Shown here one piece after another: positions 3,279-53,405 of a DNA stretch of 64,000 bases. The number at the start of each line of letters is the position of its first letter. Within the stretch, counting starts at the first letter, position 1. Where the stretch lies: positions 124,001 through 188,000 of the IMG/VR virus record IMGVR_UViG_3300030019_000003. The stretch is one strand, 5' to 3'. Under the pieces are notes generated by a model. That model did no database searches and was not told where the DNA came from. It saw only the letters and a list, made by a program, of their open reading frames with translations. The translations under genes and the position numbers were made by a program.

Positions 3279-3733
3279 AAGAGATGATTGATATAACACC
3301 TGATATAGGAGTGTTTGTGATTACAACAAATGTTGCTAGGGAGGCTGGGTATGTTAAAATCAAAGGTAAAATCTTCATGCTTTTTAGACTTGTTAAAAAG
3401 CATGAATGTTCTAAAGTTGAAAGTTTCAGTCTTACGCTGTATGATAGTAAAACAAACACAACAAGTCCGTTACATCATGACGTAGTGGAAGGGTTTGATG
3501 GAGATCTAATCATCGTGCGCTGGTGTGTAAATGGTCCAATTGCTGGATACGATAAATTGATTATTAATGTTAATGAGTGTATCCATGTTATGAATTTATT
3601 CTTCCCACCTATAACAGTTATAACTGCATACGAGATGGACGAGTACAACACATTGTCACGAGGATACGTATCTATATATACAGGGGATATGTACAAATCA
3701 CATTCATCTAGTGGCACACCATTACTAGACTAA
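3275..3733 (+). CDS. hypothetical protein (152 aa)
   Basis: ATGA overlap with upstream stop; GGGAG RBS. Confidence 0.75.
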   Translation: MKEMIDITPDIGVFVITTNVAREAGYVKIKGKIFMLFRLVKKHECSKVESFSLTLYDSKTNTTSPLHHDVVEGFDGDLIIVRWCVNGPIAGYDKLIINVNECIHVMNLFFPPITVITAYEMDEYNTLSRGYVSIYTGDMYKSHSSSGTPLLD

Positions 3734-3736
3734 AAG

Positions 3737-3892
3737 ATGCGTACCCTAGTAATACTAGTTATAATCACTATGGTTGCTATAGCTGTGTTTTTAGAAATAC
3801 TTTGTAGTACGGGTAATAGTGGTGATAATGTAACTGATAAGCATGATACAATGTCTGAGGTAGTTGTTATCAAACATGTTATTAAAAATTAA
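3737..3892 (+). CDS. small single-pass membrane protein (51 aa)
   Basis: Read manually: MRTLVILVIITMVAIAVFLEILCSTG...; fills the gap between two genes. Confidence 0.55.
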   Translation: MRTLVILVIITMVAIAVFLEILCSTGNSGDNVTDKHDTMSEVVVIKHVIKN

Positions 3893-9603: not shown

Positions 9604-9619
9604 CCTTATTTTTTTTTAT

Positions 9620-29969: not shown

Positions 29970-30076
29970 TTATAGTTACAAAAAAGATTAATGTTTTATA
30001 TATGATACCGTTCATATATAAAAACTAGATACTGTCTAGTACTTAATAATAACAAAAAAAAAACAAGGAGTTAATT

Positions 30077-37825: not shown

Positions 37826-40783
37826 TTATTTTTTAGCATCTTCTTTAGCTTTGTCTTCTTCTTCTTTTTTCTTCTTAGCCTCATCATCTGCTTTTTTCTT
37901 TTCTTCTTCTTCCTTAGCTTTTTTATCAGCTTCGGCTTTATCATCTACTTCTTTATCCGTAGTTGCATCTGAGTTTTCATCTGTAGTCTCTTCAGGAGCT
38001 TCTTCTGCCTTTTCAGGTTCAGGCTCATCTTCCGTACCGGTATCAGTTGTGTCTGGTTCTTCAGAAGTACCTTCTTCTACAGGTTCATCGGTAGATTCTT
38101 CACTTCCTTCATCTGGTGTAGCTTCCGGTTCTTCTGCGGTATCATTTTCATCACCACCGAAATTATCACTGAAGTCATCACTGCCACCTATATCTCCACC
38201 ATTAGTATCAGTGTCAGTATCGCTACCTTCTTCACCTCCACCAGATGTCTCACCATAAGTATCTTCAGTATCACTAGCACCATCTGCAGGAGCACTCACT
38301 TTTTCCATCTTGATATCAAGTTTTGTTGTCATCTTTTGTAATTCACCAAGGAACGGAACAATAGAGTCACCAAGATTTTTCATAAAGGATGTGAAGTTAC
38401 CAAATGCATTAAAGACATAACCATTAGTATCATCTTTAATAATAAATTCTGATAACTCTGGCATATAGTCATTATCGGCCATCCATTTACGAATCATAAC
38501 TGCTTTTAATACACCTTTAATAATATCAATCTTACCACCTACAGCACCAATAAGTTCTGAACCCATAACTTCAGCTGGGAACATAATATCAATGTTCTCT
38601 TCTAGTGCTGTTTTAAAGGACTGGAAGGCATCGTGGAGTGTTTGAGCTTCAGTTGTCTCTGGAGATGGTAGTTCAGTCTTTATTTCGCTTATGATAATAT
38701 CTATTAACGCATCTAATAAGTCGTCATCTTTTAAATTCTTAATACTACCAACACTATCTTCATTTAGTATATCACGATCGTCATTATTTTTACCAACAGA
38801 ACGAACATGTTTTTTAATCTCAGCAAGCTGTGCTTTTAAAAGTATTTTTAATTTATCTTTAAAAGCGTAATCATTCTTACAAAGTTTTCTGACATGTTTT
38901 GTTACCATAATCATTAGTCTGGTTTGTAACTGTTTTGTTTGTTTAGCAAACAATAAGTTCTTAGCAACAACAGAGGTTGCAAAATCTGAACTATACCCTG
39001 ATTCTACGATTTCAGGTGTTAAGCCGTATGCTAAGTAGATCATTGTTCTAACAGATTCATCTGTACTATCATCAGGTATAACTTTGCTACCACCTTCATT
39101 AGAGATATCTAATGACATGTTAGGTAACCCAGCAGCTTCACCTTTAGGATCAATAATGATACCTGCAGATTGTCCCCACGCTACAAGATCATTAATATTT
39201 GATAAACCAAAAGGTGCAGTACTCGCACGTGTCTTAATATACTCTGATCTAACCATATCAATAGTACCCTGAGGATCAGTATCATTCTCATCAAGATCAA
39301 TAGATATTTTGGTAGTCGTTGTACTGTTCTTAATAGATGCTAGTACTTTTGTAAATAATAAGATAGAACGTATAGAGTGTAACATAGCTGTTTTCTCTAT
39401 AAGAGATTTACCTGTTCCATTCTCTCTATAATCAAAAGCATAGAACGCCATATTTTCAGCTGGGATGTAAACTAATTTTGTACGTTTAGATCTCAAAGCT
39501 CTAAAGAACATTACTCTATAGATATCCGTATTATCTCTGATTGTAGCAAGTGAATCATACCCACCTTTTTCAATTGCTTTACGAATAGCATCATCAACAA
39601 CACGATTATAGATTTCTTCAATGTTCTTAATAGTTGGTTCTTTAGAAGTAATACCTACCAAAGCTGACTTAGCTCTGTTAATAACACTGTTCTCTGTAGC
39701 TTGTAACATATTCGTTCGCATCATATTAGACATCTGATCTTCATTATATTCAGTTGTTGTTCTAATAGGAGAACCTTTCTCATCAAGCATTGCAAAGAAT
39801 CCTATTTGTTTTGTAGGATCGTTAATAACGTATAATGGTATCAGTGACTCAACAGGTATTTTAAATACCATGGCTTTACCAATAGATTTTCTATCTGTTA
39901 GATCATCTGGGGTAATAGATACAAACTCTTTAAACTCATCACCATCATTAATCCTGAATAAACTATAAAGTTCATCATAAACAGGTTGTACGTTAAAATC
40001 AATAGACTCTTTACTTAACTCTTGTTCACGTTTTTCATACGCTCTAGCCGGTTTAAACATGATTGTTTTATCATCAGTGATGTCAAACATAAGATCATCA
40101 GTAGTAAATTTTACATTAGCACCTTTGTCCTCTAATGAGACACCGTCTTTTTTATAAGCAAGACGTGTTACTGAAGATGCCAGTTCACTTTCTGTATATT
40201 CAAAAGAAAGATTTTCCGTAGAAACATGTTTAATTTCTGGATCAGGATCTATTAACTTTCTATCCTCTCCTGATAATTTCTTGTAGTTATCCATATTGAC
40301 TTTACCATCAGTCTTAATGGCATCGGTACCATTAATAAGCATATCGACTGCGGCCTCTGATACAATTACTTGTGCCCATGAACCTTTTGTAAAATAAGCT
40401 TCTCTTAAGATATCGGTTAGCATTTCTTCAAAGTTAAATTCTTTATTTAAATATTTCTCAGTAAGAGAAGCGATCGAAGATTTTAAATCATCGGGTAAGT
40501 TAACTGTTGATAAAGAATATGATATAGTTGTTGATAACAAGTTATTAGGAGATAAGATACTAGCGGTGATGATTTGTATACATTTTTCAATATCTGGAAA
40601 TAATTCTGTAATGTTATCATTGTTTTTTATCTTGTCAATATTATGACGTATCACACCTTGATAATCCACTGTTCTCGCCGGAACGGTCATTTCTCTGGCG
40701 CTAACGTTCAATTTAGTGATTATGGCGGCAGTTCCTAGATCGCCCTTTTCTAACTTAGGTATCAAACCTTTATTTGTATTCAT
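37826..40783 (-). CDS. portal protein (phiKZ gp129-like) with long acidic C-terminal tail
   Basis: LFPDIEKCIQIITASILSPN, LREAYFTKGS, GFFAMLDEKG motifs; start 40783 or 40789; divergent from gp130-like gene. Confidence 0.78.
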   Translation of the reverse strand: MNTNKGLIPKLEKGDLGTAAIITKLNVSAREMTVPARTVDYQGVIRHNIDKIKNNDNITELFPDIEKCIQIITASILSPNNLLSTTISYSLSTVNLPDDLKSSIASLTEKYLNKEFNFEEMLTDILREAYFTKGSWAQVIVSEAAVDMLINGTDAIKTDGKVNMDNYKKLSGEDRKLIDPDPEIKHVSTENLSFEYTESELASSVTRLAYKKDGVSLEDKGANVKFTTDDLMFDITDDKTIMFKPARAYEKREQELSKESIDFNVQPVYDELYSLFRINDGDEFKEFVSITPDDLTDRKSIGKAMVFKIPVESLIPLYVINDPTKQIGFFAMLDEKGSPIRTTTEYNEDQMSNMMRTNMLQATENSVINRAKSALVGITSKEPTIKNIEEIYNRVVDDAIRKAIEKGGYDSLATIRDNTDIYRVMFFRALRSKRTKLVYIPAENMAFYAFDYRENGTGKSLIEKTAMLHSIRSILLFTKVLASIKNSTTTTKISIDLDENDTDPQGTIDMVRSEYIKTRASTAPFGLSNINDLVAWGQSAGIIIDPKGEAAGLPNMSLDISNEGGSKVIPDDSTDESVRTMIYLAYGLTPEIVESGYSSDFATSVVAKNLLFAKQTKQLQTRLMIMVTKHVRKLCKNDYAFKDKLKILLKAQLAEIKKHVRSVGKNNDDRDILNEDSVGSIKNLKDDDLLDALIDIIISEIKTELPSPETTEAQTLHDAFQSFKTALEENIDIMFPAEVMGSELIGAVGGKIDIIKGVLKAVMIRKWMADNDYMPELSEFIIKDDTNGYVFNAFGNFTSFMKNLGDSIVPFLGELQKMTTKLDIKMEKVSAPADGASDTEDTYGETSGGGEEGSDTDTDTNGGDIGGSDDFSDNFGGDENDTAEEPEATPDEGSEESTDEPVEEGTSEEPDTTDTGTEDEPEPEKAEEAPEETTDENSDATTDKEVDDKAEADKKAKEEEEKKKADDEAKKKKEEEDKAKEDAKK

Positions 40784-40805
40784 ATTCATTACCTTAAGGA
40801 TTAAG

Positions 40806-43277
40806 ATGTTCAGTACTCTTGACGAATACAATGAGAAACTCTTGTATCTCACTAATTCCCTAAATATAAAATTAATAGATGTAGCTGCAGCTATGAATAA
40901 TGGGGTTGTTGCTGCTGGATATTCCATCCCTGATAATAAAGAGGAATGGAAATACTTTTTAAATATTTCTGGTCAAAGACATATTACCAATAGCGATGTT
41001 AAAATAACCATTATAGAAACATCTGAAGTAGTTTCTCTTACTAAAGAAATATTAGTAAAATACCCTTATACAAAATCAGAATTGTTAAAACAAGATAAGT
41101 ATTATATCAATCTTACAGAAGCATATCCTAATGATACTTTATTTATTAAAGGGTGTATGTACCCTTGTGATATATCTGCAGCAGTAGCTGCTGATGAGGG
41201 AACTATACTTTCTTATGATACTAATCTGGTAGAAGTTTCTGAATATACCCTAATTTCTGATTTAGAGGGTTATGTTCAACGTTTTCTAAAACGTTGGAAT
41301 GTCAAAGCATATACTATTGTTGATGGGCTTTATCTATCAGGTTTAATAGCAGTACTCTATGCTAATATACCGCCACAAATTACAGCAATACGTGTAAGTA
41401 AGATAAACACTGCTGAAGTACATAGTTTCTTTTTAGAACATTTCTTTCGTTCTAATCTTAATCTGTGGGATGATGTACAGGTACTTAAGCCACAAACGAT
41501 CTATTGGTTATACCGAAATCTAAAATACTTAAGAAAAAACTTAGGTAAACAAAAGACATTAGACCTCATACTAACAAAAGTATTTGATACTAACAGTTAT
41601 GGTGTTGGAACGTATAATATAAAGATACCAGATCAGTTAGTTAATACTAACTTTATAAATGATCCAACAGTCCCGTATTTTAAACGACAAGATCCTATCG
41701 TTGTTAGTGAAGGTCTTAATAAATCATTTACAACAGATAACTCTGAAACATTAACACTACCTGAGTTTATAACATTAGAAGAAACTAGAAGTGTTAATAT
41801 GGATATAGTTCCAACAACAGATATTATAACCTTTGATACAAGTATCTTACAAAATAACTTAAAGTATCAAAGACACAACACTGTTAAAACAAAAGCTATT
41901 ACCGTTAGTACTATTAAACTTTTTGATAGTAAGAATGTTGACATCTTAGAGCTTATCCTTTATTACTGGGCACATGCTGTTAAGAATGATAGTTATAACA
42001 CAGTTGTTGACTATACAGAACCTAATACAGTTTCTATAAGTGCTGATACGTTAATAGATTATACGGATCCTAATAGTAATCAGTTCTTCACATTGACACC
42101 TAGACAAGGTTTATTGTTTTTAATTAAGCAACTATTGTTTATAACTGGTAATACAAGTTTACCATTATCAACTTTAAATTATGCTGTATTATCAACAGAT
42201 ACAGATCGTTTTGATACTGTTGTCAAGAACTCTTATCACGATGGGTATACTGAAACATTCGTACCTTTTATTAAGGATGCCCTACCAAAAGACATGGGTG
42301 ATATGAATAGTGTTTTAGAATTCAACACCTATCTTACTAAAGTGATGGACTACCATGGTTTAGTATGGACACTTGATAGTAATAGTGAAAATGCTCTTGT
42401 AAGTATGAATATTAAAAATATCATGGGTAAGATGTTATTATCCGATACTTTTGATTTAACAACAGCCGGTAAATCATTAACAATTGATGAGCTTATTCTT
42501 AAAGAGAATAAAACCTATACGATGACAAATAACTTTAATGTTTATAACTCTATGACTGTTTTAATAAAAGCATTTACGGGTATAGATATTGATCCTTATT
42601 TAAATATTAGAGATAGGCTAACATGTCTTACGAATATTCTTAATAAGTTAACATCGTATACAGTACAGTGTATTAAGCCTGATGCTGTTAAAGATGAAAT
42701 TCCTGTATACTACAATAACATACAGAACGTTCGTGCAATTAACGGCCTTGTAGCGTGTTTAGATGCCGATCTAACTCCTCTAGAATTAAACTATGTCCAT
42801 ATTAAGGCAATAGCCAATGATTTTAGAGACAGACTTACATTTTTTAGTTATATCACTAATCCGTTAGCAGGGATGTGTTCTAAACCTATTTCAGGATATG
42901 CCGTTATTGATGATACCGTTAATGAGTTTGAGATAGAGACGAGCACACCAGCTACAAGAATAAGTGTTATGGATAAAGTTATCTGTGATGCTAAGTATGT
43001 TAATTACAAAGACCAATTCTTAATAGGAATAACCAGTGAAGTCTATCCTAATGAGAAATTTATAGGTAATGTTGTTGCTAGCTCTGAGGTCCCTATAGAC
43101 GCAGTAGCAAGTTTTAGTACAACTAGCCCTGATACAAGAGTTATTGTCTCTAAGGACCAGCTAGAGGGTCTAGCTGTTGTTATAGAGGATGATGATTTTG
43201 AAATCTATCAACCGTCTCCTATTAGAGATATAGTTGTCTCTGATATTGAAACAATTTATACTGTAGAAAAGCCATAG
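40806..43277 (+). CDS. virion structural protein (phiKZ gp130-like, probable baseplate)
   Basis: WKYFLNISGQRH, LFIKGCMYP, WLYRNLKYL motifs; AAGGA RBS before ATG 40806. Confidence 0.7.
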   Translation: MFSTLDEYNEKLLYLTNSLNIKLIDVAAAMNNGVVAAGYSIPDNKEEWKYFLNISGQRHITNSDVKITIIETSEVVSLTKEILVKYPYTKSELLKQDKYYINLTEAYPNDTLFIKGCMYPCDISAAVAADEGTILSYDTNLVEVSEYTLISDLEGYVQRFLKRWNVKAYTIVDGLYLSGLIAVLYANIPPQITAIRVSKINTAEVHSFFLEHFFRSNLNLWDDVQVLKPQTIYWLYRNLKYLRKNLGKQKTLDLILTKVFDTNSYGVGTYNIKIPDQLVNTNFINDPTVPYFKRQDPIVVSEGLNKSFTTDNSETLTLPEFITLEETRSVNMDIVPTTDIITFDTSILQNNLKYQRHNTVKTKAITVSTIKLFDSKNVDILELILYYWAHAVKNDSYNTVVDYTEPNTVSISADTLIDYTDPNSNQFFTLTPRQGLLFLIKQLLFITGNTSLPLSTLNYAVLSTDTDRFDTVVKNSYHDGYTETFVPFIKDALPKDMGDMNSVLEFNTYLTKVMDYHGLVWTLDSNSENALVSMNIKNIMGKMLLSDTFDLTTAGKSLTIDELILKENKTYTMTNNFNVYNSMTVLIKAFTGIDIDPYLNIRDRLTCLTNILNKLTSYTVQCIKPDAVKDEIPVYYNNIQNVRAINGLVACLDADLTPLELNYVHIKAIANDFRDRLTFFSYITNPLAGMCSKPISGYAVIDDTVNEFEIETSTPATRISVMDKVICDAKYVNYKDQFLIGITSEVYPNEKFIGNVVASSEVPIDAVASFSTTSPDTRVIVSKDQLEGLAVVIEDDDFEIYQPSPIRDIVVSDIETIYTVEKP

Positions 43278-43598: not shown

Positions 43599-43619
43599 TA
43601 TTATTATTTTTTTTTTATT

Positions 43620-45657: not shown

Positions 45658-45851
45658 AACACTTCCTTTTCTTCTTTTATTTTTTCTTCAATACAGGATA
45701 TTATTGTTACATTATTTTTGGGATAGTCATTTTTAAATTCCATTACAGCATAATCTTTAGCTTCCTCTTCTGAAGAAGCTATCTTTACTATATGTTTATC
45801 CCCTAATGATTTTACATCACTTCTTAGCAACAGGTTGTACAAACTTAGCAT
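45654..45851 (-). CDS. small hypothetical protein (65 aa)
   Basis: AAGGAG RBS; ATGA overlap downstream. Confidence 0.6.
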   Translation of the reverse strand: MLSLYNLLLRSDVKSLGDKHIVKIASSEEEAKDYAVMEFKNDYPKNNVTIISCIEEKIKEEKEVL

Positions 45852-47280
45852 ATTGCTCCTTCACCGTCTTGTCTTCATTAAGAAAATAAGGAAAGTATAA
45901 ACCTTTACGCATTTTCAGTAAATCAACGCTACTTAGGTATGGTACCGGATTATCATATTGATTAATAGTCCAATATTCACGTGTTTGCAATAGCATATTC
46001 CAATCATAACCTTGCGCTTTAAGATCGTCATAAAGTTCTTTAGGCGTACAGAGTAAACCGATACGTTCTATTTCAGATTTATAAATACTGATCTGAAACA
46101 ATTCAGATGTAATATTAAGAGCTCTTCGTAATAGCGCATTGTTATCAATCTTTTCACGTACCGTTGTTCTGCTTAACGTTACATCTGGTAAAAGATCTAA
46201 GCTGTAATACTTATCATTACCGCCAATACCATACCTACCATTTTCTTTAATGTTGTGAAACTCGGACAATGCTGGCATCACACCATCTGTTTGCGATACG
46301 ACTAAAGTAATAGTACAACCACTTACACCTGTTTTACTTCTTAGAACACTAAGTCTAACCGTATTAAGATCAGTATCATTATGGTCGGTAGGGCCATTAG
46401 GATACTCAGGACCTTTAGTACCTTGATTCTTAAGTACAGAAGCGGTATGAGCAAACCAACCGTTTGTTAATAAAAATGTAAACTTACTACTAACACCTTT
46501 TAAAGCATCCCCTGTCTTAAGAAACTGAAGTTGTCTTGTCGGTTGATTATAAGCAGCAGGACCTGTAGCCATGTCTACTTTAGTACCAATATGTGCCGTC
46601 ATTAGCAGACATGTGTTTGACGAGTCTGTTAGTCGTGGTAATGTTGACATCCATTTTGTTTTAAACTTGCTTTGCTGTAAAGCATAAGTATTTGTATCCG
46701 ATTTATCAATATCCTTTTCTAACATAATAGCGGTACTGGATGCTTCAAATTCAGTAATACTGTCAACTGCTGTAAAGCTTGGTATATAGGTTACCAACTC
46801 TTTTTTAGTATAAGGATCTGTAAAAGCTTGATACACCATTTTGCTATTTTTATCTTTAAGCTTTTCTTTAATATACTCTCCAAAAATATTAGCAAACTCA
46901 TCTGCGAACATATGACCTTTATCGGTTACTGTCCATGCTGCTTCGGCTCCTGTGATAATCTCAGGAGGTAGATTAGGAAATCTAGCAGCTAATGTTTCTA
47001 AACGACTTAAGGATGTATTGTTTTCAGTGTCATAGGTTAGCATAACTGTTTTCATTGCTTCAAAAATTCTATTTGCTGCCTGTAACATCATGTATTGTAT
47101 AATAGTGCTTTTAAAGCTATTACCAGGACCAACAACAGCTGTTACTTGTCCTAAGCCGCCATTGATAATTGTCTCGCCTCTCTTACCTATAATAAACGAC
47201 GCTGTAGGTATATCTAGCAAAGCGCCAATGTTAATTAAAATCTTTGGGGTTGTCTTTTCTTGTACGTTAAAACCTACCAT
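45817..47280 (-). CDS. uvsX: UvsX/RecA-like recombinase (phiKZ gp152-like)
   Basis: Walker A GPGNSFKST, YDTEN, VDSITEF, MTAHIG, LRSKTGVSG. Confidence 0.88.
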   Translation of the reverse strand: MVGFNVQEKTTPKILINIGALLDIPTASFIIGKRGETIINGGLGQVTAVVGPGNSFKSTIIQYMMLQAANRIFEAMKTVMLTYDTENNTSLSRLETLAARFPNLPPEIITGAEAAWTVTDKGHMFADEFANIFGEYIKEKLKDKNSKMVYQAFTDPYTKKELVTYIPSFTAVDSITEFEASSTAIMLEKDIDKSDTNTYALQQSKFKTKWMSTLPRLTDSSNTCLLMTAHIGTKVDMATGPAAYNQPTRQLQFLKTGDALKGVSSKFTFLLTNGWFAHTASVLKNQGTKGPEYPNGPTDHNDTDLNTVRLSVLRSKTGVSGCTITLVVSQTDGVMPALSEFHNIKENGRYGIGGNDKYYSLDLLPDVTLSRTTVREKIDNNALLRRALNITSELFQISIYKSEIERIGLLCTPKELYDDLKAQGYDWNMLLQTREYWTINQYDNPVPYLSSVDLLKMRKGLYFPYFLNEDKTVKEQYAKFVQPVAKK

Positions 47281-47318
47281 TTTTCATCCTTACTATATAT
47301 TCTATCTAAAAACGTGTT

Positions 47319-47342
47319 TATAAAATATTGCCAGTTAATTGA
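47319..47342 (+). promoter_or_regulatory. 24-bp intergenic motif, copy 1
   Basis: TATAAAATATTGCCAGTTAATTGA, 23/24 identical to 50894-50917. Confidence 0.6.
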
Positions 47343-47370
47343 CTAAATACCCTAATTAAGGAAGATACCC

Positions 47371-48300
47371 ATGAATAAAGAACTAGCTGTTGAACATGCT
47401 GAAATCATCGAAAGTCTTAATGACATTAAAAAACACGGTGAATTCATGTCAACAATCGCACATGAAGATTTAGCTTCTGTTTTGGTTAGTATTAAACAGT
47501 ACTTTACTAAATTCATTCCAAATGTTGCTAAAGCATTTGCGGAAAATGCTGATAGATTAACAAAGTTTGATAAAGATCATTACAATAGTTTTATCAGACA
47601 GATCTATGAAATTGAAACAGATATTAAGAAAATTGCAGAGGTTCCTTATAGCTCTGTAATGGATGTTAAAGTACCTGTCATGCTAGGTATGAAACAAAAC
47701 CTACTCACCACAGCTAGCGAGCTTAAGAAAGCATCAACAGTTATCAATGATAATCTAAGAGTACTCCTAGAATATACTGACATCTTTATTTCACTTGTAT
47801 TGTCAAATGAAGATTTTAGAACAGCTTCTCGTGTTAACTATGCTATGTTGTATCAACGTTATCGCGAAGATCATAAGGGTAACCCTTTAACAGCTGATAA
47901 GATCTATGGTATTACCTATGAGCTAGAGGCTATTGTAGATAAACTTATTGACCCTAAGAATCATAGCGATCAAAGATTTATTAAGGAACTTGTTCCTAAT
48001 ATTAATAGTCTTTACTTCGTACAAGCAGATATACTAGAAGCTGCTAAAGGTACAACATTTGCAGATACTGAAAATATTCAAACTGAAGTAACAAAATTAT
48101 CAGAACGCGCTGATGTACTTTATGATGTTATCACAACGGATACAGAGTTTAAAATTAATAAAGCCTTGATCAATGAGTTAGCAGGTGTACTAGAAGATAG
48201 CGGTAGAGCTATTACTTCTGCAGTGACCCTATGGCACATTATGAATCAAACGGCAACCACATTAAAATTTACTGTTGACACTATCAAACGTTTTAAATAG
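47371..48300 (+). CDS. head/inner-body protein (phiKZ gp153 position)
   Basis: AAGGAAG RBS; helical 309 aa; synteny between UvsX and RNase H. Confidence 0.6.
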   Translation: MNKELAVEHAEIIESLNDIKKHGEFMSTIAHEDLASVLVSIKQYFTKFIPNVAKAFAENADRLTKFDKDHYNSFIRQIYEIETDIKKIAEVPYSSVMDVKVPVMLGMKQNLLTTASELKKASTVINDNLRVLLEYTDIFISLVLSNEDFRTASRVNYAMLYQRYREDHKGNPLTADKIYGITYELEAIVDKLIDPKNHSDQRFIKELVPNINSLYFVQADILEAAKGTTFADTENIQTEVTKLSERADVLYDVITTDTEFKINKALINELAGVLEDSGRAITSAVTLWHIMNQTATTLKFTVDTIKRFK

Positions 48301-48331
48301 TATAACACAGGGATATCCCTGTGTTATACTA
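48298..48331. terminator. perfect 34-bp palindrome between convergent genes
   Basis: TAGTATAACACAGGGATATCCCTGTGTTATACTA overlapping both stop codons. Confidence 0.75.
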
Positions 48332-49819
48332 AGATTTTTTACCTTTAGGTTTAGCACCTTGTAATAGAACGTTGTTATTATAGAAATTACACCATATAGA
48401 AATATCACCTGTTGTTCTACAGTCTATAAGGATATAATAGTTCAATAGGTTATCACCTACTTTTTTAATTACCAACATAACCTTTGGTTCAAGATCTTCT
48501 ATTTGTTTAAAATGGTCTCGAGTGATACAATCTTTACCTAAGAACACAGGGAACTTAATAATATTACCATCAAGATCAACATCCATAAGCATGAATGATT
48601 CTTTGTTAGTAATGTTTATAACGTTCTTACCTTTTTCATTTACGGTAAAGATTTTATCCGTTATATCAATATACTCTCTAAGAGGTTTTTCTTTATTTAG
48701 TTTAGAGTATTCGTCAACAATGTCATAGAGCAACACTGTTCTCTCTACAGCACTGTTAGCTAAACCTGGAGGGCGTATTGCTTTAACAACTGTTTCTTCA
48801 TCTCTGAACTTTAAAGCTGTAAAGTAATTATCAAAGTTATACATCTTCTCTTTAAAGAGTTCATGTAAGGTTCTGACATTTCTACTGTATAAAACATCAA
48901 GATCAATCGTTGAAATTAAAGCAGTTGGTCTTAACTTTTGAGTATACCATGAAATAACATCCTCTATTAAAGGTTGTTTGGTTTTTAAAGAAACCAATCC
49001 AAAGATAGCCTCATGTGATGCCCTACCTGGTTCAATATCCTTCTTATACTCCATAACACTATAGATAGCTCTTTCATCTTTTAAAGTAGTTATACCCATA
49101 AAGTATAAGTTACTAAATCTTAAGAAAGGATGCCTGTCTTCTGTACCTGGTGCGTAATACTTTTTAGCAGGACTAATTTTAAAATCAACCTCAGTTATAT
49201 TTTTATAACTGTACATTCTAGCCATAACGGCCATCCTGTCCGCATTGTTATTACCTAAAGATATAGAATGACCTTTAACCTTAACAAGATCTAGTTCTAT
49301 ATCTCTTACTTTGACTTCTCTCACAACTGTCCGCATCAATTCAACATAATCTAAATTCTTTTTAATACGATCTCTCCACGCAACTGCATCATAATTCTTA
49401 ACTGCATTATAAACAGCTATAGCGTACTCGCTGTCTAACTTTATGGTTATTTTTTTAATATCAAGATCTGTTATTTTTAATAACTCCATAAGTGTCAATG
49501 TTACAGCTTGGAGCTCTCCAGTATTATTAGTACCTGTCCCTTCAAAAGAATAACAGGCGTTAATATAGTGTGTTGGTGTAACATCTTGATATGGTTCTCG
49601 TTCTAGTTCATCTTTAAAAACATATCCTATATTTGTAACAGCATAATTAGTAGGTCTATTAGCTGTTTTCTTACCTAAAGATGACAATGGATAAACATAT
49701 CCATGAACACCAGAGCCCCAAAAACCAGGATTGGACGGACCACAACTTCCATCAGTGTAAGCCACGACGGCATATTCCTCAGCACTACTTATGGTTTCAG
49801 TATTTTTAATTTTACTCAT
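48329..49819 (-). CDS. rnhA: ribonuclease HI with C-terminal extension (phiKZ gp155-like)
   Basis: YTDGSC, TNNTGELQA, LDSEY, VKGHS, GNNNADRMA; GAGGA RBS before ATG 49819. Confidence 0.9.
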   Translation of the reverse strand: MSKIKNTETISSAEEYAVVAYTDGSCGPSNPGFWGSGVHGYVYPLSSLGKKTANRPTNYAVTNIGYVFKDELEREPYQDVTPTHYINACYSFEGTGTNNTGELQAVTLTLMELLKITDLDIKKITIKLDSEYAIAVYNAVKNYDAVAWRDRIKKNLDYVELMRTVVREVKVRDIELDLVKVKGHSISLGNNNADRMAVMARMYSYKNITEVDFKISPAKKYYAPGTEDRHPFLRFSNLYFMGITTLKDERAIYSVMEYKKDIEPGRASHEAIFGLVSLKTKQPLIEDVISWYTQKLRPTALISTIDLDVLYSRNVRTLHELFKEKMYNFDNYFTALKFRDEETVVKAIRPPGLANSAVERTVLLYDIVDEYSKLNKEKPLREYIDITDKIFTVNEKGKNVINITNKESFMLMDVDLDGNIIKFPVFLGKDCITRDHFKQIEDLEPKVMLVIKKVGDNLLNYYILIDCRTTGDISIWCNFYNNNVLLQGAKPKGKKS

Positions 49820-49899
49820 CAACATATCCTCTATTTGATTAAATTCTTTATACGAAATTCTTAACAGCTTGTAGCCATTATCTAAAGCTATTTTATTTT

Positions 49900-50691
49900 T
49901 TATAGCATCTCTTTTTTGTATGTTTTTTTAAGTTCTTCAATACCACCCCAACTGTTGTGCTTAAAATGTTGCCGTCCGTCATATTCAATAAGCAAGTTAT
50001 AATCTGGTAAATAAAAATCGTAACTATACCTGAATGGAACTATCTTGTATTGTCTAACAAATCTTATATTTTTAAAAGATAGCAATATATCTAGCTTATC
50101 CTCTCCTTTAGAATTTGTTTTACACCACGGGCAGCCAGCGCCCTGTAAATGCGAACTTGCATTTTGCTCAAAATCACCATGTTCTAAACATGTTATAATG
50201 ATCTTATTGCAATCTCCGGTATAGATTATGTTATCGTAATAATATCTTTCACCGTGTACATTTTTAGCGTCTGCTATAAATTGATCTTTAGTTTTTAATT
50301 TTAACTTACTTACATATTCCTCGCCACATTTTCTACACCCGTGACCGCTCATATGTAACTTCGGGCTTTGCATAAAATAACCGTGCTTGAAACATCTTAT
50401 TTTAACAGGGGTTACTCTATTTATAAAGTCTATTTCGGCATATCCGTATCTATCGCCGTGGGTTATTTTAGCTCTTTCTAGAAAAGATTCTTTCGTGACC
50501 TCTGTTTTCCCACCACACGTAAAACAACCTCTTCCTTGTATATGCGCGTACGCCTTTTGCTCAAAAGCGCCGTGCATGGGACATATGATTATAACTTTAT
50601 CATGTGCCCTAGTGTATATTGTTTTACTGTAGTCATATTTATTATTATGTATAAAATTAGCTCTTTTTATAAATAACTTTGTTCTATCCAA
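49900..50691 (-). CDS. free-standing endonuclease (three Zn-binding C..HG.F.Q...H..G.GC..C repeats plus PD-(D/E)xK Vsr-like domain), frameshifted near C-terminus
   Basis: YDFYLPDYNLLIEYDGRQHF; AAAGGA RBS before TTG 50691; expected tail KRDAIKN...LLRISY lies in another frame. Confidence 0.8.
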   Translation of the reverse strand: MDRTKLFIKRANFIHNNKYDYSKTIYTRAHDKVIIICPMHGAFEQKAYAHIQGRGCFTCGGKTEVTKESFLERAKITHGDRYGYAEIDFINRVTPVKIRCFKHGYFMQSPKLHMSGHGCRKCGEEYVSKLKLKTKDQFIADAKNVHGERYYYDNIIYTGDCNKIIITCLEHGDFEQNASSHLQGAGCPWCKTNSKGEDKLDILLSFKNIRFVRQYKIVPFRYSYDFYLPDYNLLIEYDGRQHFKHNSWGGIEELKKTYKKEML

Positions 50692-50725
50692 GTGAATTCC
50701 TTTCGCGTACACAGCTGTGTGTATG

Positions 50726-50854
50726 TTAAGTATTATCAGTGTGCGACATTAAGAAATAATAAGATTTAAATTTGGGATTTGCTGAACCATCACTGTAGCA
50801 GATTACAGCGTATTCTTCTGGAGCAGTTTCTTCCACTATTTTCTTAGAAGCCAT
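50726..50854 (-). pseudogene. stranded 5' fragment of RNase H
   Basis: Read manually: MASKKIVEETAPEEYAVICYSDGSANP plus 15 unrelated codons; matches EEYAVVAYTDGSCGP of the downstream RNase H; AAGGA RBS. Confidence 0.8.
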
Positions 50855-50893
50855 GATTTTATCCTTAAATCTATTTCTATTAAATACCCCTAA

Positions 50894-50917
50894 TATAAAA
50901 TATTGACAGTTAATTGA
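50894..50917 (+). promoter_or_regulatory. 24-bp intergenic motif, copy 2
   Basis: TATAAAATATTGACAGTTAATTGA. Confidence 0.6.
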
Positions 50918-50938
50918 ATATCACAGTAAAGGCTGGCT

Positions 50939-51448
50939 ATGAATGAAGAAATTGATACACTTGCAGTGCAGGAAGAAAACCCAGTTCCCGAGCCTACTGG
51001 CGAAACTGGAAATTTAAATAATAAAGATAGTGGATTTTTAACCACTAAAGACCAACAAATGTTGGATAAATCAATCGACTTAAGATTCAAAATAGTGGAT
51101 AACTTTTTTAAGGATGGTGACCCTACAGATAACCGAGATATCAGAGTTATAAATGAACTATTGACAGGTGTTGATGCGAGTATCCATAAGAGAGCTGAAT
51201 CACGATTAAAGTACACTTCTGTTAATAATACAGGTAAGCTTGTTGACATCGCTATAGCTACATTAAAAGCTAAGCGTAGTGGTAAAGTAGATGATCTTAT
51301 GCTACTTACAGGTACTGGAACTATTCCTAACATAACAGATGACATTATTGATGTTGAAATTGTTCACGGTGAACTAGAGCTTAATCCTGATCCATTAGAT
51401 ATTGAGGACTTTGTTAATAACGCACAATTACCTAAGGATCTACTATGA
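50939..51448 (+). CDS. conserved phiKZ-like protein (gp156 position)
   Basis: Acidic helical 169 aa; synteny. Confidence 0.6.
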   Translation: MNEEIDTLAVQEENPVPEPTGETGNLNNKDSGFLTTKDQQMLDKSIDLRFKIVDNFFKDGDPTDNRDIRVINELLTGVDASIHKRAESRLKYTSVNNTGKLVDIAIATLKAKRSGKVDDLMLLTGTGTIPNITDDIIDVEIVHGELELNPDPLDIEDFVNNAQLPKDLL

Positions 51449-52257
51449 CCATTAATGGACAGCGTACTATGTACGGTATACATGTTGAGTTAAGCAGGCT
51501 TTTAGGGAAAGAATACACGCCATTAGCAAATACAACTCTAAATGAAAAATTTGATATTATTCCTAATATTGAGTTAGCAGACTCGTTATATCCAACATTA
51601 GGTTATTATGCCATAGGTGTCGGCGGTGATCCTATTATTGTAGGCAACCCTGGGTATACTTATTCTAAACATTCTCCCGTAGATGCAGCTTTGTTTAAGC
51701 ATGTCCCATTTTTAATGCGAACACTTACCAATGATCTTAGTAATGATGAGCGCAGTGCCTACAGATTAAGAGTTATAGAAACTATTAACAATGTAGATTA
51801 TGCTTGTTATTATTTAAAAGCTATACCCTTAATAGAACTAAGGGATTATTTCTATAAAATAGTAACCGTTAATGATGAGACAGTACTTCGTGTTTTTACA
51901 ACAGATACAGATAAATTATTAAACCCTGTCCCTCAAACACGATCAGTAGATACAACAGACATTACAACTTCTAACTATGTTACTAACATAGCTAAACTAA
52001 AATTTGCTTTAACATTAACAGAGATGGAAGATTTAAAAACAGTTTTTAGTTTAAGAGGTATAAGTGAATTAAAAATCACTGAGATAGGATTAGTTATGGG
52101 TATAGATCAAACACAAGCAGACGGACTACCTGAGCTAGCAGTAGCGCAAATATCTCACCATGTAGAAGTATCATTAGATCTTGCAGTACAACTGGCTAAT
52201 GCTGAGAGTATTGTACGTGCTATTGAAATAGGTGGCAGTGAGCCGCTCTTACTATGA
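51445..52257 (+). CDS. virion structural protein (phiKZ gp157-like)
   Basis: NTTLNEKF, YYAIGVGG, DAALFKHVPF, YRLR, YYLK motifs. Confidence 0.75.
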   Translation: MTINGQRTMYGIHVELSRLLGKEYTPLANTTLNEKFDIIPNIELADSLYPTLGYYAIGVGGDPIIVGNPGYTYSKHSPVDAALFKHVPFLMRTLTNDLSNDERSAYRLRVIETINNVDYACYYLKAIPLIELRDYFYKIVTVNDETVLRVFTTDTDKLLNPVPQTRSVDTTDITTSNYVTNIAKLKFALTLTEMEDLKTVFSLRGISELKITEIGLVMGIDQTQADGLPELAVAQISHHVEVSLDLAVQLANAESIVRAIEIGGSEPLLL

Positions 52258-52853
52258 ACACATTTAAGTTACTTGCTATTGATCCTGGTAAGAATATTGG
52301 TGTTACCGTCCTAACGGTACGTGTTGACGAATTTATACCTTTTAATAAAATGAAAGCTCATGATGGCGTGCCTGTAAGTGTTTCTTTTACAATAGTAAAT
52401 ATTGAGACACATTACATAGGATTAGATAATCTCATACCTCGTGATGCAGTAGATAAGCAACTAGCGAGAATAGGTATACTCCAACAGGTTATGGGTAACA
52501 TAATGAGTTATTTTCAACCTGATGTTTTAGCTATTGAAGAAGCTTTCTTAAATGTAAATTATGCTACTGCTGTAATGCAGCTATCACAATACTTATCAGT
52601 TATCTTAAACGCAGCTATCAATGCCAACCCTTATATCAAACTCTTTAGATATTCTCCTAAGAGTATTAAAAGTGGTTTTGGTGCTGGTGGTGGAGCTAAT
52701 AAGGATGACATGTTAACCAGAATTTCAACGATTACAGAATACACTTCTATGGTTGATATTACTAAGTTAACAGAACATGAGATAGACTCTATGGCTATTG
52801 CTCATGTTGCGCTTTCTGAAATACGTAACTATCCATTTTTGTTATACACATGA
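52254..52853 (+). CDS. ruvC: RuvC-like Holliday junction resolvase
   Basis: LAIDPG, AIEEAF, GGANKDDM, HEIDSMAIA catalytic motifs. Confidence 0.85.
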   Translation: MNTFKLLAIDPGKNIGVTVLTVRVDEFIPFNKMKAHDGVPVSVSFTIVNIETHYIGLDNLIPRDAVDKQLARIGILQQVMGNIMSYFQPDVLAIEEAFLNVNYATAVMQLSQYLSVILNAAINANPYIKLFRYSPKSIKSGFGAGGGANKDDMLTRISTITEYTSMVDITKLTEHEIDSMAIAHVALSEIRNYPFLLYT

Positions 52854-52876
52854 CTCTTGTGAGTCATGTGTATAAC
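52841..52876. terminator. inverted repeat terminator
   Basis: 16-bp arms, 4-nt loop, followed by TTTT. Confidence 0.7.
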
Positions 52877-52913
52877 TTTTGGTATTTTGTCTTATTAATG
52901 AAAAGGAGTACAT

Positions 52914-53405
52914 ATGGGTATATATTCCAGTATTAAGAAAGTATTTAAAACCATTGGCTACGCCACTAATATTAAGAAACCTAATTCCTTAATAGAGAAA
53001 CTAGAACGTTTAAAAACTATTGATTTTTACCCCTATTCCGGCATCTACAGAGGGGTTATGATTAACAGTATCTTTGACAACATTATTACCTATACCTATA
53101 AACTAGATATTCTTTCTAGAGCTGATTATACAAAACATCATTATCGAGGGAATATTAATAATGAGATTATGAAAACAATAAATGTTACAGAATGGTTTTG
53201 TAATAGAAATAGCCTATTAAAAGATCCTGTTAGGGATCTACATAAATGGATAGATCTTGCTGCATCTTTTATAGAGCTGCACAGTAAGATGAGGTTGGAA
53301 TCTGATAACGATCTTGAAAGAAAGAATTTTATTATTTTTCAAACATATATCATTAACATAGAGCATATCACAGAGGTTCTATTAAGTATACATGATTCAC
53401 ACTAA
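52914..53405 (+). CDS. conserved phiKZ-like hypothetical protein (163 aa)
   Basis: AAAGGAG RBS; intact ORF. Confidence 0.7.
   Translation: MGIYSSIKKVFKTIGYATNIKKPNSLIEKLERLKTIDFYPYSGIYRGVMINSIFDNIITYTYKLDILSRADYTKHHYRGNINNEIMKTINVTEWFCNRNSLLKDPVRDLHKWIDLAASFIELHSKMRLESDNDLERKNFIIFQTYIINIEHITEVLLSIHDSH

What the first reader, a model, noticed from the sequence alone, without database searches (positions are those of the whole stretch)
49820..49930. Frameshift separates the endonuclease from an in-frame fusion to RNase H
Seen: the endonuclease ORF ends ELKKTYKKEML stop, but the -1 frame after the A7 run (49923-49929) or A6 run (49912-49917) reads IQKRDAIKNKIALDNGYKLLRISYKEFNQIEDML, the typical Vsr-like tail, and continues without a stop into RNase H. 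A -1 shift would give a ~787-aa endonuclease-RNase H fusion. The site is not a canonical X XXY YYZ heptamer. Inference: programmed slippage, a mutation that silenced the nuclease, or a homopolymer sequencing error.
Basis: partly seen in the sequence, partly recalled or inferred. Interest (0 to 1): 0.65.

Follow-up and report, generated by a model that had tools for sequence, protein, structure and literature searches.

The report
Frameshifted homing endonuclease beside phage RNase H
A selfish DNA-cutting gene that invaded the start of a giant phage's RNase H gene is broken by a real one-base frameshift in a run of A's; this looks like ordinary early decay of a mobile nuclease gene, though the break sits on a slip-prone sequence and may leak.

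Summary
All genes lie on the minus strand. A 270-codon endonuclease ORF (49900-50712) stops at TAA. The -1 frame from 49927 encodes the missing conserved C-terminal part of the nuclease domain. That frame runs without a stop into the RNase H ORF (48329-49825).

Sequencing error is excluded. A second IMG/VR contig, a JGI metagenome contig and Logan contigs from four further peat samples all match the window exactly.

The nuclease is a free-standing Vsr-like (EDxHD, I-Bth0305I/Hef-type) homing endonuclease with three zinc-ribbon repeats. The zero-frame product lacks the last near-invariant Asp, a core strand and a helix.

More than 30 homologues carry the domain in one frame. There is no conserved slip site and no downstream RNA structure. 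Syntenic relatives have no endonuclease at this position.

RNase H has its own Shine-Dalgarno sequence and ATG. A 42-codon relic of an older RNase H 5' end lies upstream, which I read as the scar of a one-sided homing event.

Most likely a one-A deletion in a lysine A-tract broke a nuclease gene already fixed in this phage population. The second A-run is identical to a site known to shift in E. coli, so leaky or exploited frameshifting stays possible.

The parts
50729..50854 (-). Relic 5' end of an RNase H gene. It is a 42-codon ORF (stop at 50726-50728). The first 27 codons (MASKKIVEETAPEEYAVICYSDGSANP) are homologous to RNase H N-termini up to just before the NPGF motif; the rest is unrelated. 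It keeps an AAGGA SD (50866-50862) 7 nt before its ATG.
   Evidence: BLASTP against the resident RNase H gives E 7e-6. It scores 14.6 bits against an HMM of 24 other RNase H N-termini, above all 2000 shuffles (maximum 10.1). The DNA is only about 61% identical to the current 5' end. It is absent from syntenic relatives.
49900..50712 (-). Zero-frame ORF of the homing endonuclease: 270 aa from GTG 50712. The likelier start is TTG 50691-50689, preceded by AAGGA at 50702-50698. It holds three Zn-ribbon repeats (C-x2-H...H...C-x2-C) and the first two thirds of a Vsr-like nuclease domain, and it ends at TAA 49902-49900.
   Evidence: phrog_559 E 1.9e-50. Weak Pfam matches to DUF723, DUF559 and DUF4379. 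2355 homologues. 1081 phage records.
49903..49927 (-). Shift window: the only stretch where a -1 shift gives an open product. It contains A7 (49923-49929, phase CTT AAA AAA ACA) and A6 (49912-49917, phase TAC AAA AAA GAG).
   Evidence: TAC AAA AAA G in this phase equals the pDEST17 attB1 -1 frameshift site (PMC1851650).
49826..49927 (-). The -1 frame tail, 34 codons. It encodes the rest of the nuclease domain: the last near-invariant Asp (in KRD), the core strand LLRISY and the C-terminal helix.
   Evidence: phrog_559 positions 373-418. Alignment with more than 30 homologues. D83 is nearly invariant. AF2 model elements H72-92, E96-101 and H102-116.
49943..49949 (-). SD-like GGGGUGG, 13 nt upstream of the A7 run. 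It encodes the family-conserved (W)GG.
   Evidence: Read from the sequence. The conserved GG column is seen, so the motif may be there for coding reasons alone.
49827..49832 (-). AGAGGA Shine-Dalgarno for RNase H, 7 nt before ATG 49819-49817. It lies inside the last codons of the endonuclease tail.
   Evidence: Sequence. Public gene callers start the protein at this ATG, giving 496 aa (P0121).
48329..49825 (-). Intact RNase H gene of the 480-500 aa jumbo-phage type, with D, E, D, D motifs visible at YTDGS, NNTGEL, LDSEYA and NNNADR.
   Evidence: PF00075 E 8.7e-14. phrog_3265 E 9.6e-63. 24 relatives of 473-537 aa. 60 jumbo-phage records.
48298..48331 (.). 34-nt perfect palindrome (15-bp stem) acting as a two-way terminator between RNase H and the convergent gene 47371-48300. 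No terminator was found between the relic, the endonuclease and RNase H.
   Evidence: Logan contigs break at this palindrome.

Best explanation
A free-standing Vsr-like (EDxHD-type) homing endonuclease gene sits directly upstream of the RNase H gene of an uncultivated peat jumbo phage. The phage is a 252-kb record with terminal repeats, distantly phiKZ-like. I infer that the endonuclease arrived by a one-sided homing event. In that model the resident RNase H gene was cut just before its NPGF codons, and the break was repaired from a donor carrying the endonuclease next to its own RNase H 5' end. The resident first 27 codons were left behind as a relic. The endonuclease later lost one A from a lysine-coding A-tract (A8 to A7, or A7 to A6). 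Normal translation now stops 34 codons early. The product keeps the three zinc-ribbon DNA-binding repeats and lacks the last active-site Asp, one core strand and the final helix, so it should not cut DNA. RNase H is translated separately from its own SD and ATG inside the old tail. The tail frame has no stop before that ATG, so any ribosome or polymerase that slips -1 at the A-runs makes a 787-794 aa endonuclease-RNase H chimera. I regard this as unselected leakage, not an evolved device. Shown: the frameshift is real DNA, the tail is homologous to the family, the family norm is one ORF, relatives have empty sites, and the relic is an RNase H fragment. Inferred: the deletion event, the homing history, loss of activity, and the independent start of RNase H.
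For: - The DNA is real. The sequence is identical in IMGVR_UViG_3300031521_000014 over 9494 nt. It is identical in JGI contig Ga0302208_10003014 over 3489 nt. Logan contigs of four other peat samples span the site with 0 differences and 0 gaps.
- The tail continues the same family profile.
- More than 30 homologues carry the region in one frame, with variable residues at the site.
- The nearly invariant D83 lies in the tail. It aligns with the KDKRK Asp of I-Bth0305I, which I identify with active-site Asp222 / Vsr Asp97 of PMC3239194.
- The fold model has pLDDT 91, and its best matches include Vsr 1cw0 and I-Bth0305I 3r3p.
- There is no downstream structure: z = -0.37.
- The two nearest syntenic relatives (39% and 47% identical RNase H) have no endonuclease at this position.
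- No endonuclease-RNase H fusion appears among RNase H relatives of up to 931 aa.
- No endonuclease-free joints were seen in four samples. That fits a fixed element with nothing left to home into.
- The family is multi-copy and patchy in phages: 2692 places in 1081 records.
- One-sided homing with illegitimate repair is documented in T4 (PMC2988022).
Against: - The frameshift is the only lesion. All Zn ligands, the E/D/H motifs and the whole tail are intact, and bits per residue are similar for the body and the tail. The break is therefore either very young or tolerated.
- TAC AAA AAA G in the same phase gives 25-60% -1 ribosomal frameshifting in E. coli over-expression (PMC1851650).
- An SD-like GGGGUGG lies 13 nt upstream of A7.
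- The intact ancestor would itself have been a fusion unless a stop codon was also lost. That is odd for a plain free-standing gene.
- All natural copies are identical, so there is no comparative test of selection on the site.
Confidence: 0.6

Rival explanations
1. Exploited (programmed or compensatory) -1 frameshifting. A minority of ribosomes, or the phage RNA polymerase, slip at U AAA AAA or C AAA AAA. This yields small amounts of active nuclease as an N-terminal fusion to RNase H. It would throttle a potentially toxic nuclease, as IS1 and IS3 do with their transposases.
For: - There are two slip-prone AAA AAA sites inside an 8-codon window, bounded by a -1 frame stop just upstream and a zero-frame stop just downstream.
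- The second site is identical in sequence and phase to the pDEST17 attB1 site, which gives 25-60% -1 frameshifting.
- An SD-like GGGGUGG lies 13 nt upstream.
- The tail and the body are equally well preserved.
- The state is fixed in every sample.
- IS elements commonly use A-rich heptamers and the A_AAA tetramer (PMC4066793).
Against: - The split is not conserved in the family: more than 30 homologues are single ORFs with no conserved Lys-Lys at this spot.
- The phasing is not canonical X_XXZ_ZZN.
- The A_AA.A tetramer alone is at background level without a stimulator (PMC4066793).
- There is no downstream structure.
- The SD-like motif is explained by conserved Gly-Gly codons.
- No relative with the same arrangement is known.
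- No RNA or protein data exist.
Confidence: 0.25
2. The truncated 270-aa protein is the functional product. It would be a nuclease-dead zinc-ribbon DNA-binding protein kept by the phage, for example to bind or protect the RNase H target site or to regulate the operon.
For: All three Zn-ribbon repeats are intact. The ORF has a plausible SD and TTG start. The state is fixed in the population.
Against: The intact -1 tail would be unexplained if only the truncated form mattered. Two thirds of a nuclease domain without its last strand is likely to misfold. No homologues end at this position among the best hits.
Confidence: 0.08
3. The relic, the endonuclease and the duplicated RNase H 5' end form a group I intron. 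Splicing would join ...DGSANP to NPGFWG...
For: Joining the relic to the body at that point would give a plausible RNase H sequence. Many phage homing endonucleases are intron-borne (PMC3239194).
Against: There is no Rfam match at gathering level or at E up to 10. Only about 80 nt lie upstream of the endonuclease. The roughly 90 nt downstream encode a conserved, SD-preceded RNase H N-terminus, which leaves no room for a ribozyme core.
Confidence: 0.02
4. Homopolymer sequencing or assembly error: the true genome has one more A.
For: The break lies in A-runs.
Against: Seven independent assemblies from different samples have the same run lengths.
Confidence: 0.01

Closest known systems
EDxHD / Vsr-like homing endonucleases (I-Bth0305I of Bacillus phage 0305phi8-36; Hef of T4-like phage U5)
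   Same: The C-terminal Vsr-like nuclease domain has E, D, H and D residues in the family order. The best PDB sequence hit is 3r3p (E 0.054). The best fold hits include 1cw0 and 3r3p. It is phage-borne, mobile and patchy in distribution. It targets a conserved active-site region of an essential nucleic-acid enzyme, which is my inference from the relic breakpoint.
   Different: The DNA-binding part is three DUF723/DUF4379-type zinc-ribbon repeats, not the NUMOD/HTH modules of I-Bth0305I (PMC3239194). It is free-standing, not intron-encoded. The domain is split over two reading frames.
Degenerating homing endonuclease genes (the homing cycle; defunct I-TevIII of T4)
   Same: A selfish nuclease gene that is fixed in its population and carries a disabling lesion, while the host gene stays intact (PMC2790892 by its title and abstract; the cycle is summarised in PMC2988022).
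   Different: Here there is one lesion only, on a slip-prone run, so function may be partly retained. The frame runs on into the host gene.
-1 frameshift sites on A-runs: IS1 insA-insB', IS3 family, dnaX, and the pDEST17 attB1 site C-AAA-AAA
   Same: A Lys-Lys A-run. The trans-frame product fuses a DNA-binding part to a catalytic part, as in IS transposases. The 10-nt TAC AAA AAA G is identical to the attB1 site in sequence and phase.
   Different: No conserved motif across homologues, no pseudoknot or hairpin, and no evidence of any product. IS sites are conserved within their families (PMC4066793).
One-sided (illegitimate) homing and endonuclease insertions that remodel host genes (T4 td intron with limited exon homology; mobA/gene 60; Aeh1 mobE in nrdA)
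   Same: An endonuclease next to or inside an essential phage gene, and a junction not explained by clean two-sided homologous repair (PMC2988022; PMC5009743).
   Different: The host gene is not split. It is kept whole by a second, diverged copy of its 5' end, and the old 5' end is left as a 27-codon relic. From my own knowledge, the closest parallels are mitochondrial endonuclease elements that bring a replacement gene end, such as Allomyces atp6. I did not check this here.

Membership tests
EDxHD / Vsr-like homing endonuclease family | Vsr-like nuclease fold of the C-terminal domain | tested here: met
   An AF2 model built on alignment A1 (first row homologue P0008:348-472, 38% and 52% identical to the two window pieces) has pLDDT 91. 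Foldseek gives 1cw0 Vsr TMq 0.66 and 3r3p TMt 0.66, both with probability 1.0, though E-values are only 0.006-0.07. The profile search against PDB has 3r3p as best hit at E 0.054.
EDxHD / Vsr-like homing endonuclease family | Conserved E, D, H, D active-site residues encoded at the locus | tested here: met
   E in SKGED, D in YDFYLP, E and H in IEYDGRQH, and D in QKRD. All align with the conserved columns of the homologue alignment and with the residues listed in PMC3239194. The last D is encoded only in the -1 frame.
Functional (active) homing endonuclease | The whole nuclease domain in one translated polypeptide | tested here: not met
   The zero frame stops at 49902-49900, before the last Asp, strand E96-101 and helix H102-116 of the model. 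Seven assemblies agree.
Functional (active) homing endonuclease | Site-specific cleavage of the endonuclease-free allele | not testable with these tools
   This needs protein and a target. The relic breakpoint (after ...GCA AAT CCC, 50774) only suggests where the cut was.
Mobile free-standing homing endonuclease gene | Presence/absence polymorphism at a syntenic site, and multi-copy patchy spread | tested here: met
   Syntenic relatives L003 and L005/L006 lack it. The family has 2692 places in 1081 phage records, up to 18 per genome. There is a single copy in this genome.
Programmed -1 ribosomal frameshift | Slippery motif in the correct phase | tested here: inconclusive
   U_AAA_AAA and C_AAA_AAA are not canonical X_XXZ_ZZN. 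However, C-AAA-AAA in this phase shifts 25-60% in E. coli (PMC1851650). The A_AA.A tetramer alone is near background (PMC4066793).
Programmed -1 ribosomal frameshift | Stimulatory element (downstream hairpin or pseudoknot, or upstream SD-like sequence) | tested here: inconclusive
   No downstream structure beyond shuffles: z = -0.37. An SD-like GGGGUGG lies 13 nt upstream, but it encodes conserved Gly-Gly.
Programmed -1 ribosomal frameshift | Conservation of the two-frame arrangement and slip site among homologues | tested here: not met
   More than 30 closest homologues are single ORFs through this region, with variable residues. No diverged relative with the split was found.
Programmed -1 ribosomal frameshift | Detectable trans-frame product | not testable with these tools
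   No RNA runs hold the sequence, and no proteomics is available.
Group I intron-encoded endonuclease | Ribozyme core flanking the ORF | tested here: not met
   There is no group I intron match: the whole-window gathering search returned no hit at all, and the E<=10 search of 49600-51000 returned only five weak hits to unrelated small-RNA families. The flanks are too short, and one of them is coding.
RNase H (PF00075; jumbo-phage phrog_3265) | Domain match and an intact ORF with its own start | tested here: met
   PF00075 at 52.3 bits against a cutoff of 25.8. phrog_3265 E 9.6e-63 over profile positions 6-492 of 496. AGAGGA lies 7 nt before the ATG.

The most novel reading that the evidence does not exclude
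The phage keeps its homing endonuclease in a permanently out-of-frame state. Active enzyme would be made only by -1 slippage at a C-AAA-AAA / A7 pair, as a chimera with the RNase H it sits beside. This would be a frameshift throttle for a homing endonuclease, analogous to IS transposase control, with a nuclease-host enzyme fusion as the active species.
Probability: 0.2. Interest if true: 0.6.

Novelty: new member of a known kind. Interest (0 to 1): 0.3.

Why it matters
As it stands, this is a well-preserved natural example of two textbook steps in the life of a homing endonuclease. The first is invasion by one-sided repair, which leaves a datable scar that may mark the cut site inside the RNase H active-site codons. 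The second is the first disabling hit after fixation.

It matters for annotation. The 270-aa ORF should be marked as a frameshifted nuclease gene. RNase H should start at 49819. The 42-codon ORF should be marked as a gene remnant.

If the frameshift proved to be exploited, I know of no earlier homing endonuclease controlled by recoding, and the active form would be a nuclease-RNase H chimera.

Tried and rejected
- Megablast of the locus against 50,697 phage records gave no match.
- Rfam at gathering level on the whole window returned no hit at all. At E<=10 on 49600-51000 it returned only five weak hits to unrelated small-RNA families and nothing intron-like.
I could therefore not survey how often family members are split at this point. 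I relied on the 38 best protein homologues instead.
- Scans of viral and JGI metagenome contigs with the RNase H and the endonuclease returned only identical copies and one 39% relative. No intact (A8) allele, no diverged split allele and no close donor was found.
- No RNA run holds the sequence, so transcript slippage could not be examined. Only contigs, not raw reads, could be laid, so minority alleles cannot be excluded.
- A sliding identity profile of RNase H against relatives, meant to delimit a co-converted donor tract, showed no clear boundary.
- The apparent similarity between the relic's 5' UTR and the last 25 nt of the endonuclease tail is weak and AT-rich. I treat it as chance plus a shared SD.
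- A possible second resemblance, between the relic's end (YFLMSHTDNT) and the RNase H CYSFEGTGTNNT motif, has E = 1.0 and was dropped.
- Other A/T runs of 7 or more that lie at ORF junctions (7884, 37768) turned out to be ordinary neighbouring genes.
- The Sandegren 2005 Hef paper (PMC1275590) is not held.

Full report
**Setting**

The window is bases 124001-188000 of a 252,159-bp IMG/VR virus record with direct terminal repeats. GC content is 34%.

The RNase H in question finds only distant relatives (23-27% identity) among annotated phages. All are jumbo phages of Ralstonia, Burkholderia, Xanthomonas, Erwinia, Pseudomonas and E. coli (Goslar). I therefore infer an uncultivated phiKZ-like jumbo phage. 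Public runs that hold the sequence are nearly all peat metagenomes (23 of 24 rows, one wastewater; 24 studies). Everything discussed lies on the minus strand.

**The observation**

It holds exactly.
- The endonuclease ORF 49900-50712 ends ...ELKKTYKKEML, then TAA.
- The -1 frame has a TAA at 49930-49928. From 49927 it reads KNIQKRDAIKNKIALDNGYKLLRISYKEFNQIEDML and continues without a stop through the RNase H ORF (48329-49825). The stretch 48332-49927 translates as 532 aa.
- A productive shift is possible only within 49903-49927. That stretch holds the A7 run (CTT AAA AAA ACA) and the A6 run (TAC AAA AAA GAG).
- The fusion would be 794 aa from the GTG start, or 787 aa from TTG 50691. The TTG has the better SD (AAGGA, 6 nt spacing).

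**The tail is a true continuation**

- phrog_559 matches the zero-frame ORF at profile positions 125-376 (E 1.9e-50) and the tail at 373-418 (E 4.9e-7). The same two-frame split is seen when the genome is searched with the family or with my own domain alignment.
- The word search found 2355 homologues. In an alignment of the C-termini of the 38 best, the -1 tail reproduces the family pattern QxRDxIKN...NGxxLLRIxYxEFxxIExxL.
- Homologues end 3-20 residues after IExIL. In the window, IEDML is followed at once by MSKIKN..., the RNase H N-terminus.

**What the protein is**

- Pfam gives only weak DUF723, DUF559 and DUF4379 matches.
- A profile of 30 homologous nuclease domains plus the two window pieces (A1) finds the I-Bth0305I catalytic domain (3r3p) as best PDB sequence hit (E 0.054, full-domain alignment). 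AbaSI is next.
- An AlphaFold model on A1 has pLDDT 91. Its best fold matches include Vsr (1cw0, TMq 0.66), I-Bth0305I (3r3p, TMt 0.66), and PvuRts1I/AbaSI, all with modest E-values.
- Taylor et al. 2011 (PMC3239194) define this lineage as the EDxHD homing endonucleases. Its active-site residues are E170, D196, H213 and D222, equivalent to Vsr E25, D51, H69 and D97. They include the phage Hef proteins in the lineage.
- In A1 the nearly invariant columns are D46, E57, H63 and D83. D83 is the Asp of QKRD, and in the window it is encoded only in the -1 frame.
- The zero-frame product therefore lacks this Asp, most of helix 72-92, core strand 96-101 and helix 102-116 of the model. It keeps three intact C-x2-H...H...C-x2-C zinc-ribbon repeats. 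I infer it cannot cleave DNA.

**Not a sequencing error**

- A second IMG/VR contig from another metagenome is identical over 9494 nt.
- A JGI metagenome contig is identical over 3489 nt.
- Logan contigs from four further peat samples span the site (49484-50968, 48835-50241, 48797-50080, 49539-50531) with no differences or gaps.
- These are contigs at 4-7x depth, so a rare A8 allele cannot be excluded.

**Not a conserved recoding site**

- The family norm is one ORF. Residues at the break vary among homologues, so no slip site is conserved.
- No diverged relative with the same split exists in the collections searched.
- Among 24 RNase H relatives of 473-537 aa, from a search that admitted lengths up to 931 aa, there is no endonuclease-RNase H fusion.
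- The RNA downstream of the runs folds no better than shuffles: z = -0.37.
- The SD-like GGGGUGG 13 nt upstream of A7 encodes the family's conserved Gly-Gly.
- A/T runs of 7 or more are few in the window (17) and mostly intergenic. This fits their known avoidance in genes (PMC4066793) and their role as indel hot spots.
- The simplest history is therefore loss of one A. Either GAA CTT AAA AAA AAC ATA CAA... (ELKKNIQKRD) went from A8 to A7, or TAC AAA AAA AGA (TYKKRD) went from A7 to A6. The family's frequent Q before (K/R)D slightly favours the first.

**What keeps the recoding idea alive**

- The frameshift is the only defect in the gene.
- The second site, TAC AAA AAA G, is identical in sequence and phase to the Gateway attB1 site. 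There Belfield et al. showed 25-60% -1 ribosomal frameshifting in E. coli without any defined stimulator (PMC1851650).
- Against that, Sharma et al. found the A_AA.A tetramer alone at background level, about 0.15%.
- Real leakage could thus lie anywhere from about 0.1% to tens of percent. It cannot be settled here, because no RNA runs exist.

**The surroundings change the picture**

- RNase H does not need the fusion. AGAGGA (49832-49827) lies 7 nt before ATG 49819, and public gene calls start there, giving 496 aa (P0121).
- Its N-terminus MSKIKNTE... resembles other RNase H N-termini such as MAKIKK..., MAKVKEI... and MSENKE....
- No terminator was found between the relic, the endonuclease and RNase H. 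A strong 15-bp-stem palindrome follows RNase H at 48298-48331.
- The two nearest syntenic relatives have the same neighbours (RecA-like protein, a roughly 300-aa protein, RNase H, then a divergent block ending in DUF7208 and RuvC). They have no endonuclease (L003, 39% identical RNase H; L005/L006, 47%). The endonuclease is therefore an insertion in this lineage.
- Its family is present at 2692 places in 1081 phage records, with up to 18 copies per genome. It occurs once in this genome. This is typical of a mobile homing endonuclease.

**The relic**

- Upstream of the endonuclease lies a 42-codon ORF (50729-50854) with its own AAGGA SD. It sits where the RNase H start lies in the relatives.
- Its first 27 residues, MASKKIVEETAPEEYAVICYSDGSANP, match RNase H N-termini. 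BLASTP against the resident gene gives E 7e-6. It scores 14.6 bits against an HMM of 24 other N-termini, above all 2000 shuffles.
- Homology ends just before the NPGF motif next to the first catalytic Asp.
- At the DNA level the relic and the current 5' end are only about 61% identical, and their amino-acid differences are conservative. They are diverged alleles, not a recent tandem duplication.
- I infer a one-sided homing event. The resident gene was cut near ...AAT CCC. The downstream end was repaired by homology from a donor carrying the endonuclease next to its RNase H 5' end. The upstream end was joined illegitimately, which stranded the old 5' end.
- Such one-sided, microhomology-joined events are documented for T4 introns (Parker et al. 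1999, as summarised in PMC2988022).
- Which copy is resident and which is donor cannot be decided. The current 5' end shares a GSCGP insertion with the closest relative, and an identity profile showed no tract boundary.
- A group I intron reading is rejected. Rfam gave no intron-like match and there is no room for a ribozyme core.

**Why there is no stop before RNase H**

This remains unexplained.
- With a single restoring base, the ancestral nuclease would itself have been an N-terminal fusion to RNase H.
- Alternatively, a stop was lost. For example, the TTG between the two ATGs could have been one, or a second indel could lie near the TGATGA that overlaps the RNase H start in the other frames.
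- The stretch concerned is short and the evidence is nil, so I leave it open.
- One consequence is worth noting as inference. With the nuclease in frame, ribosomes would read through the RNase H SD and ATG. The frameshift makes them stop 81 nt upstream, which could even favour RNase H expression.

**Verdict**

This is a real, fixed one-base frameshift in a free-standing EDxHD-type homing endonuclease gene that invaded the 5' end of a jumbo phage RNase H gene.
- Ordinary early decay of a fixed selfish gene, with unselected leakage at slip-prone lysine codons, is the most likely explanation (about 0.6).
- Exploited frameshifting that makes a nuclease-RNase H chimera is possible (about 0.25).
- Sequencing error is excluded at consensus level.

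Noticed in passing
window 50729-50854 (-): A 42-codon ORF whose first 27 codons are a diverged copy of the RNase H N-terminus, with its own SD. It is likely the stranded original 5' end of the gene and may mark the endonuclease cut site just before the NPGF codons.
   Followed up: yes
window 48298-48331: A perfect 34-nt palindrome (15-bp stem, 6 GC pairs) between the convergent RNase H and 47371-48300 genes, likely a two-way terminator. Logan contigs from all four samples break here and give separate 34-nt pieces.
   Followed up: partly
window 45817-53405; L003 1-8149; L005 866-9001: A conserved gene block is shared with two other uncultivated large phages: a RecA/UvsX-like 480-aa protein, a roughly 300-aa protein, RNase H, then a divergent block with DUF7208 and RuvC. 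L003 has an extra 125-aa ORF (3499-3876) between RNase H and the divergent block.
   Followed up: partly
window 50855-50938 (-): An 84-nt divergent intergenic region between the relic ORF and gene 50939-51448. It contains TTTTATATTAG, which from memory resembles phiKZ-type early promoter motifs. I did not test this.
   Followed up: no
window 30054-30063, 43607-43616, 9609-9617: The longest homopolymers (A10, T10, T9) lie at or between gene ends, not inside reading frames. Only about half of the 17 runs of 7 or more lie inside long frames.
   Followed up: partly
window 37826-40927 (-): A 1033-aa protein with a very long acidic, low-complexity C-terminal tail (runs of D, E and K). Its function was not examined.
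   Followed up: no
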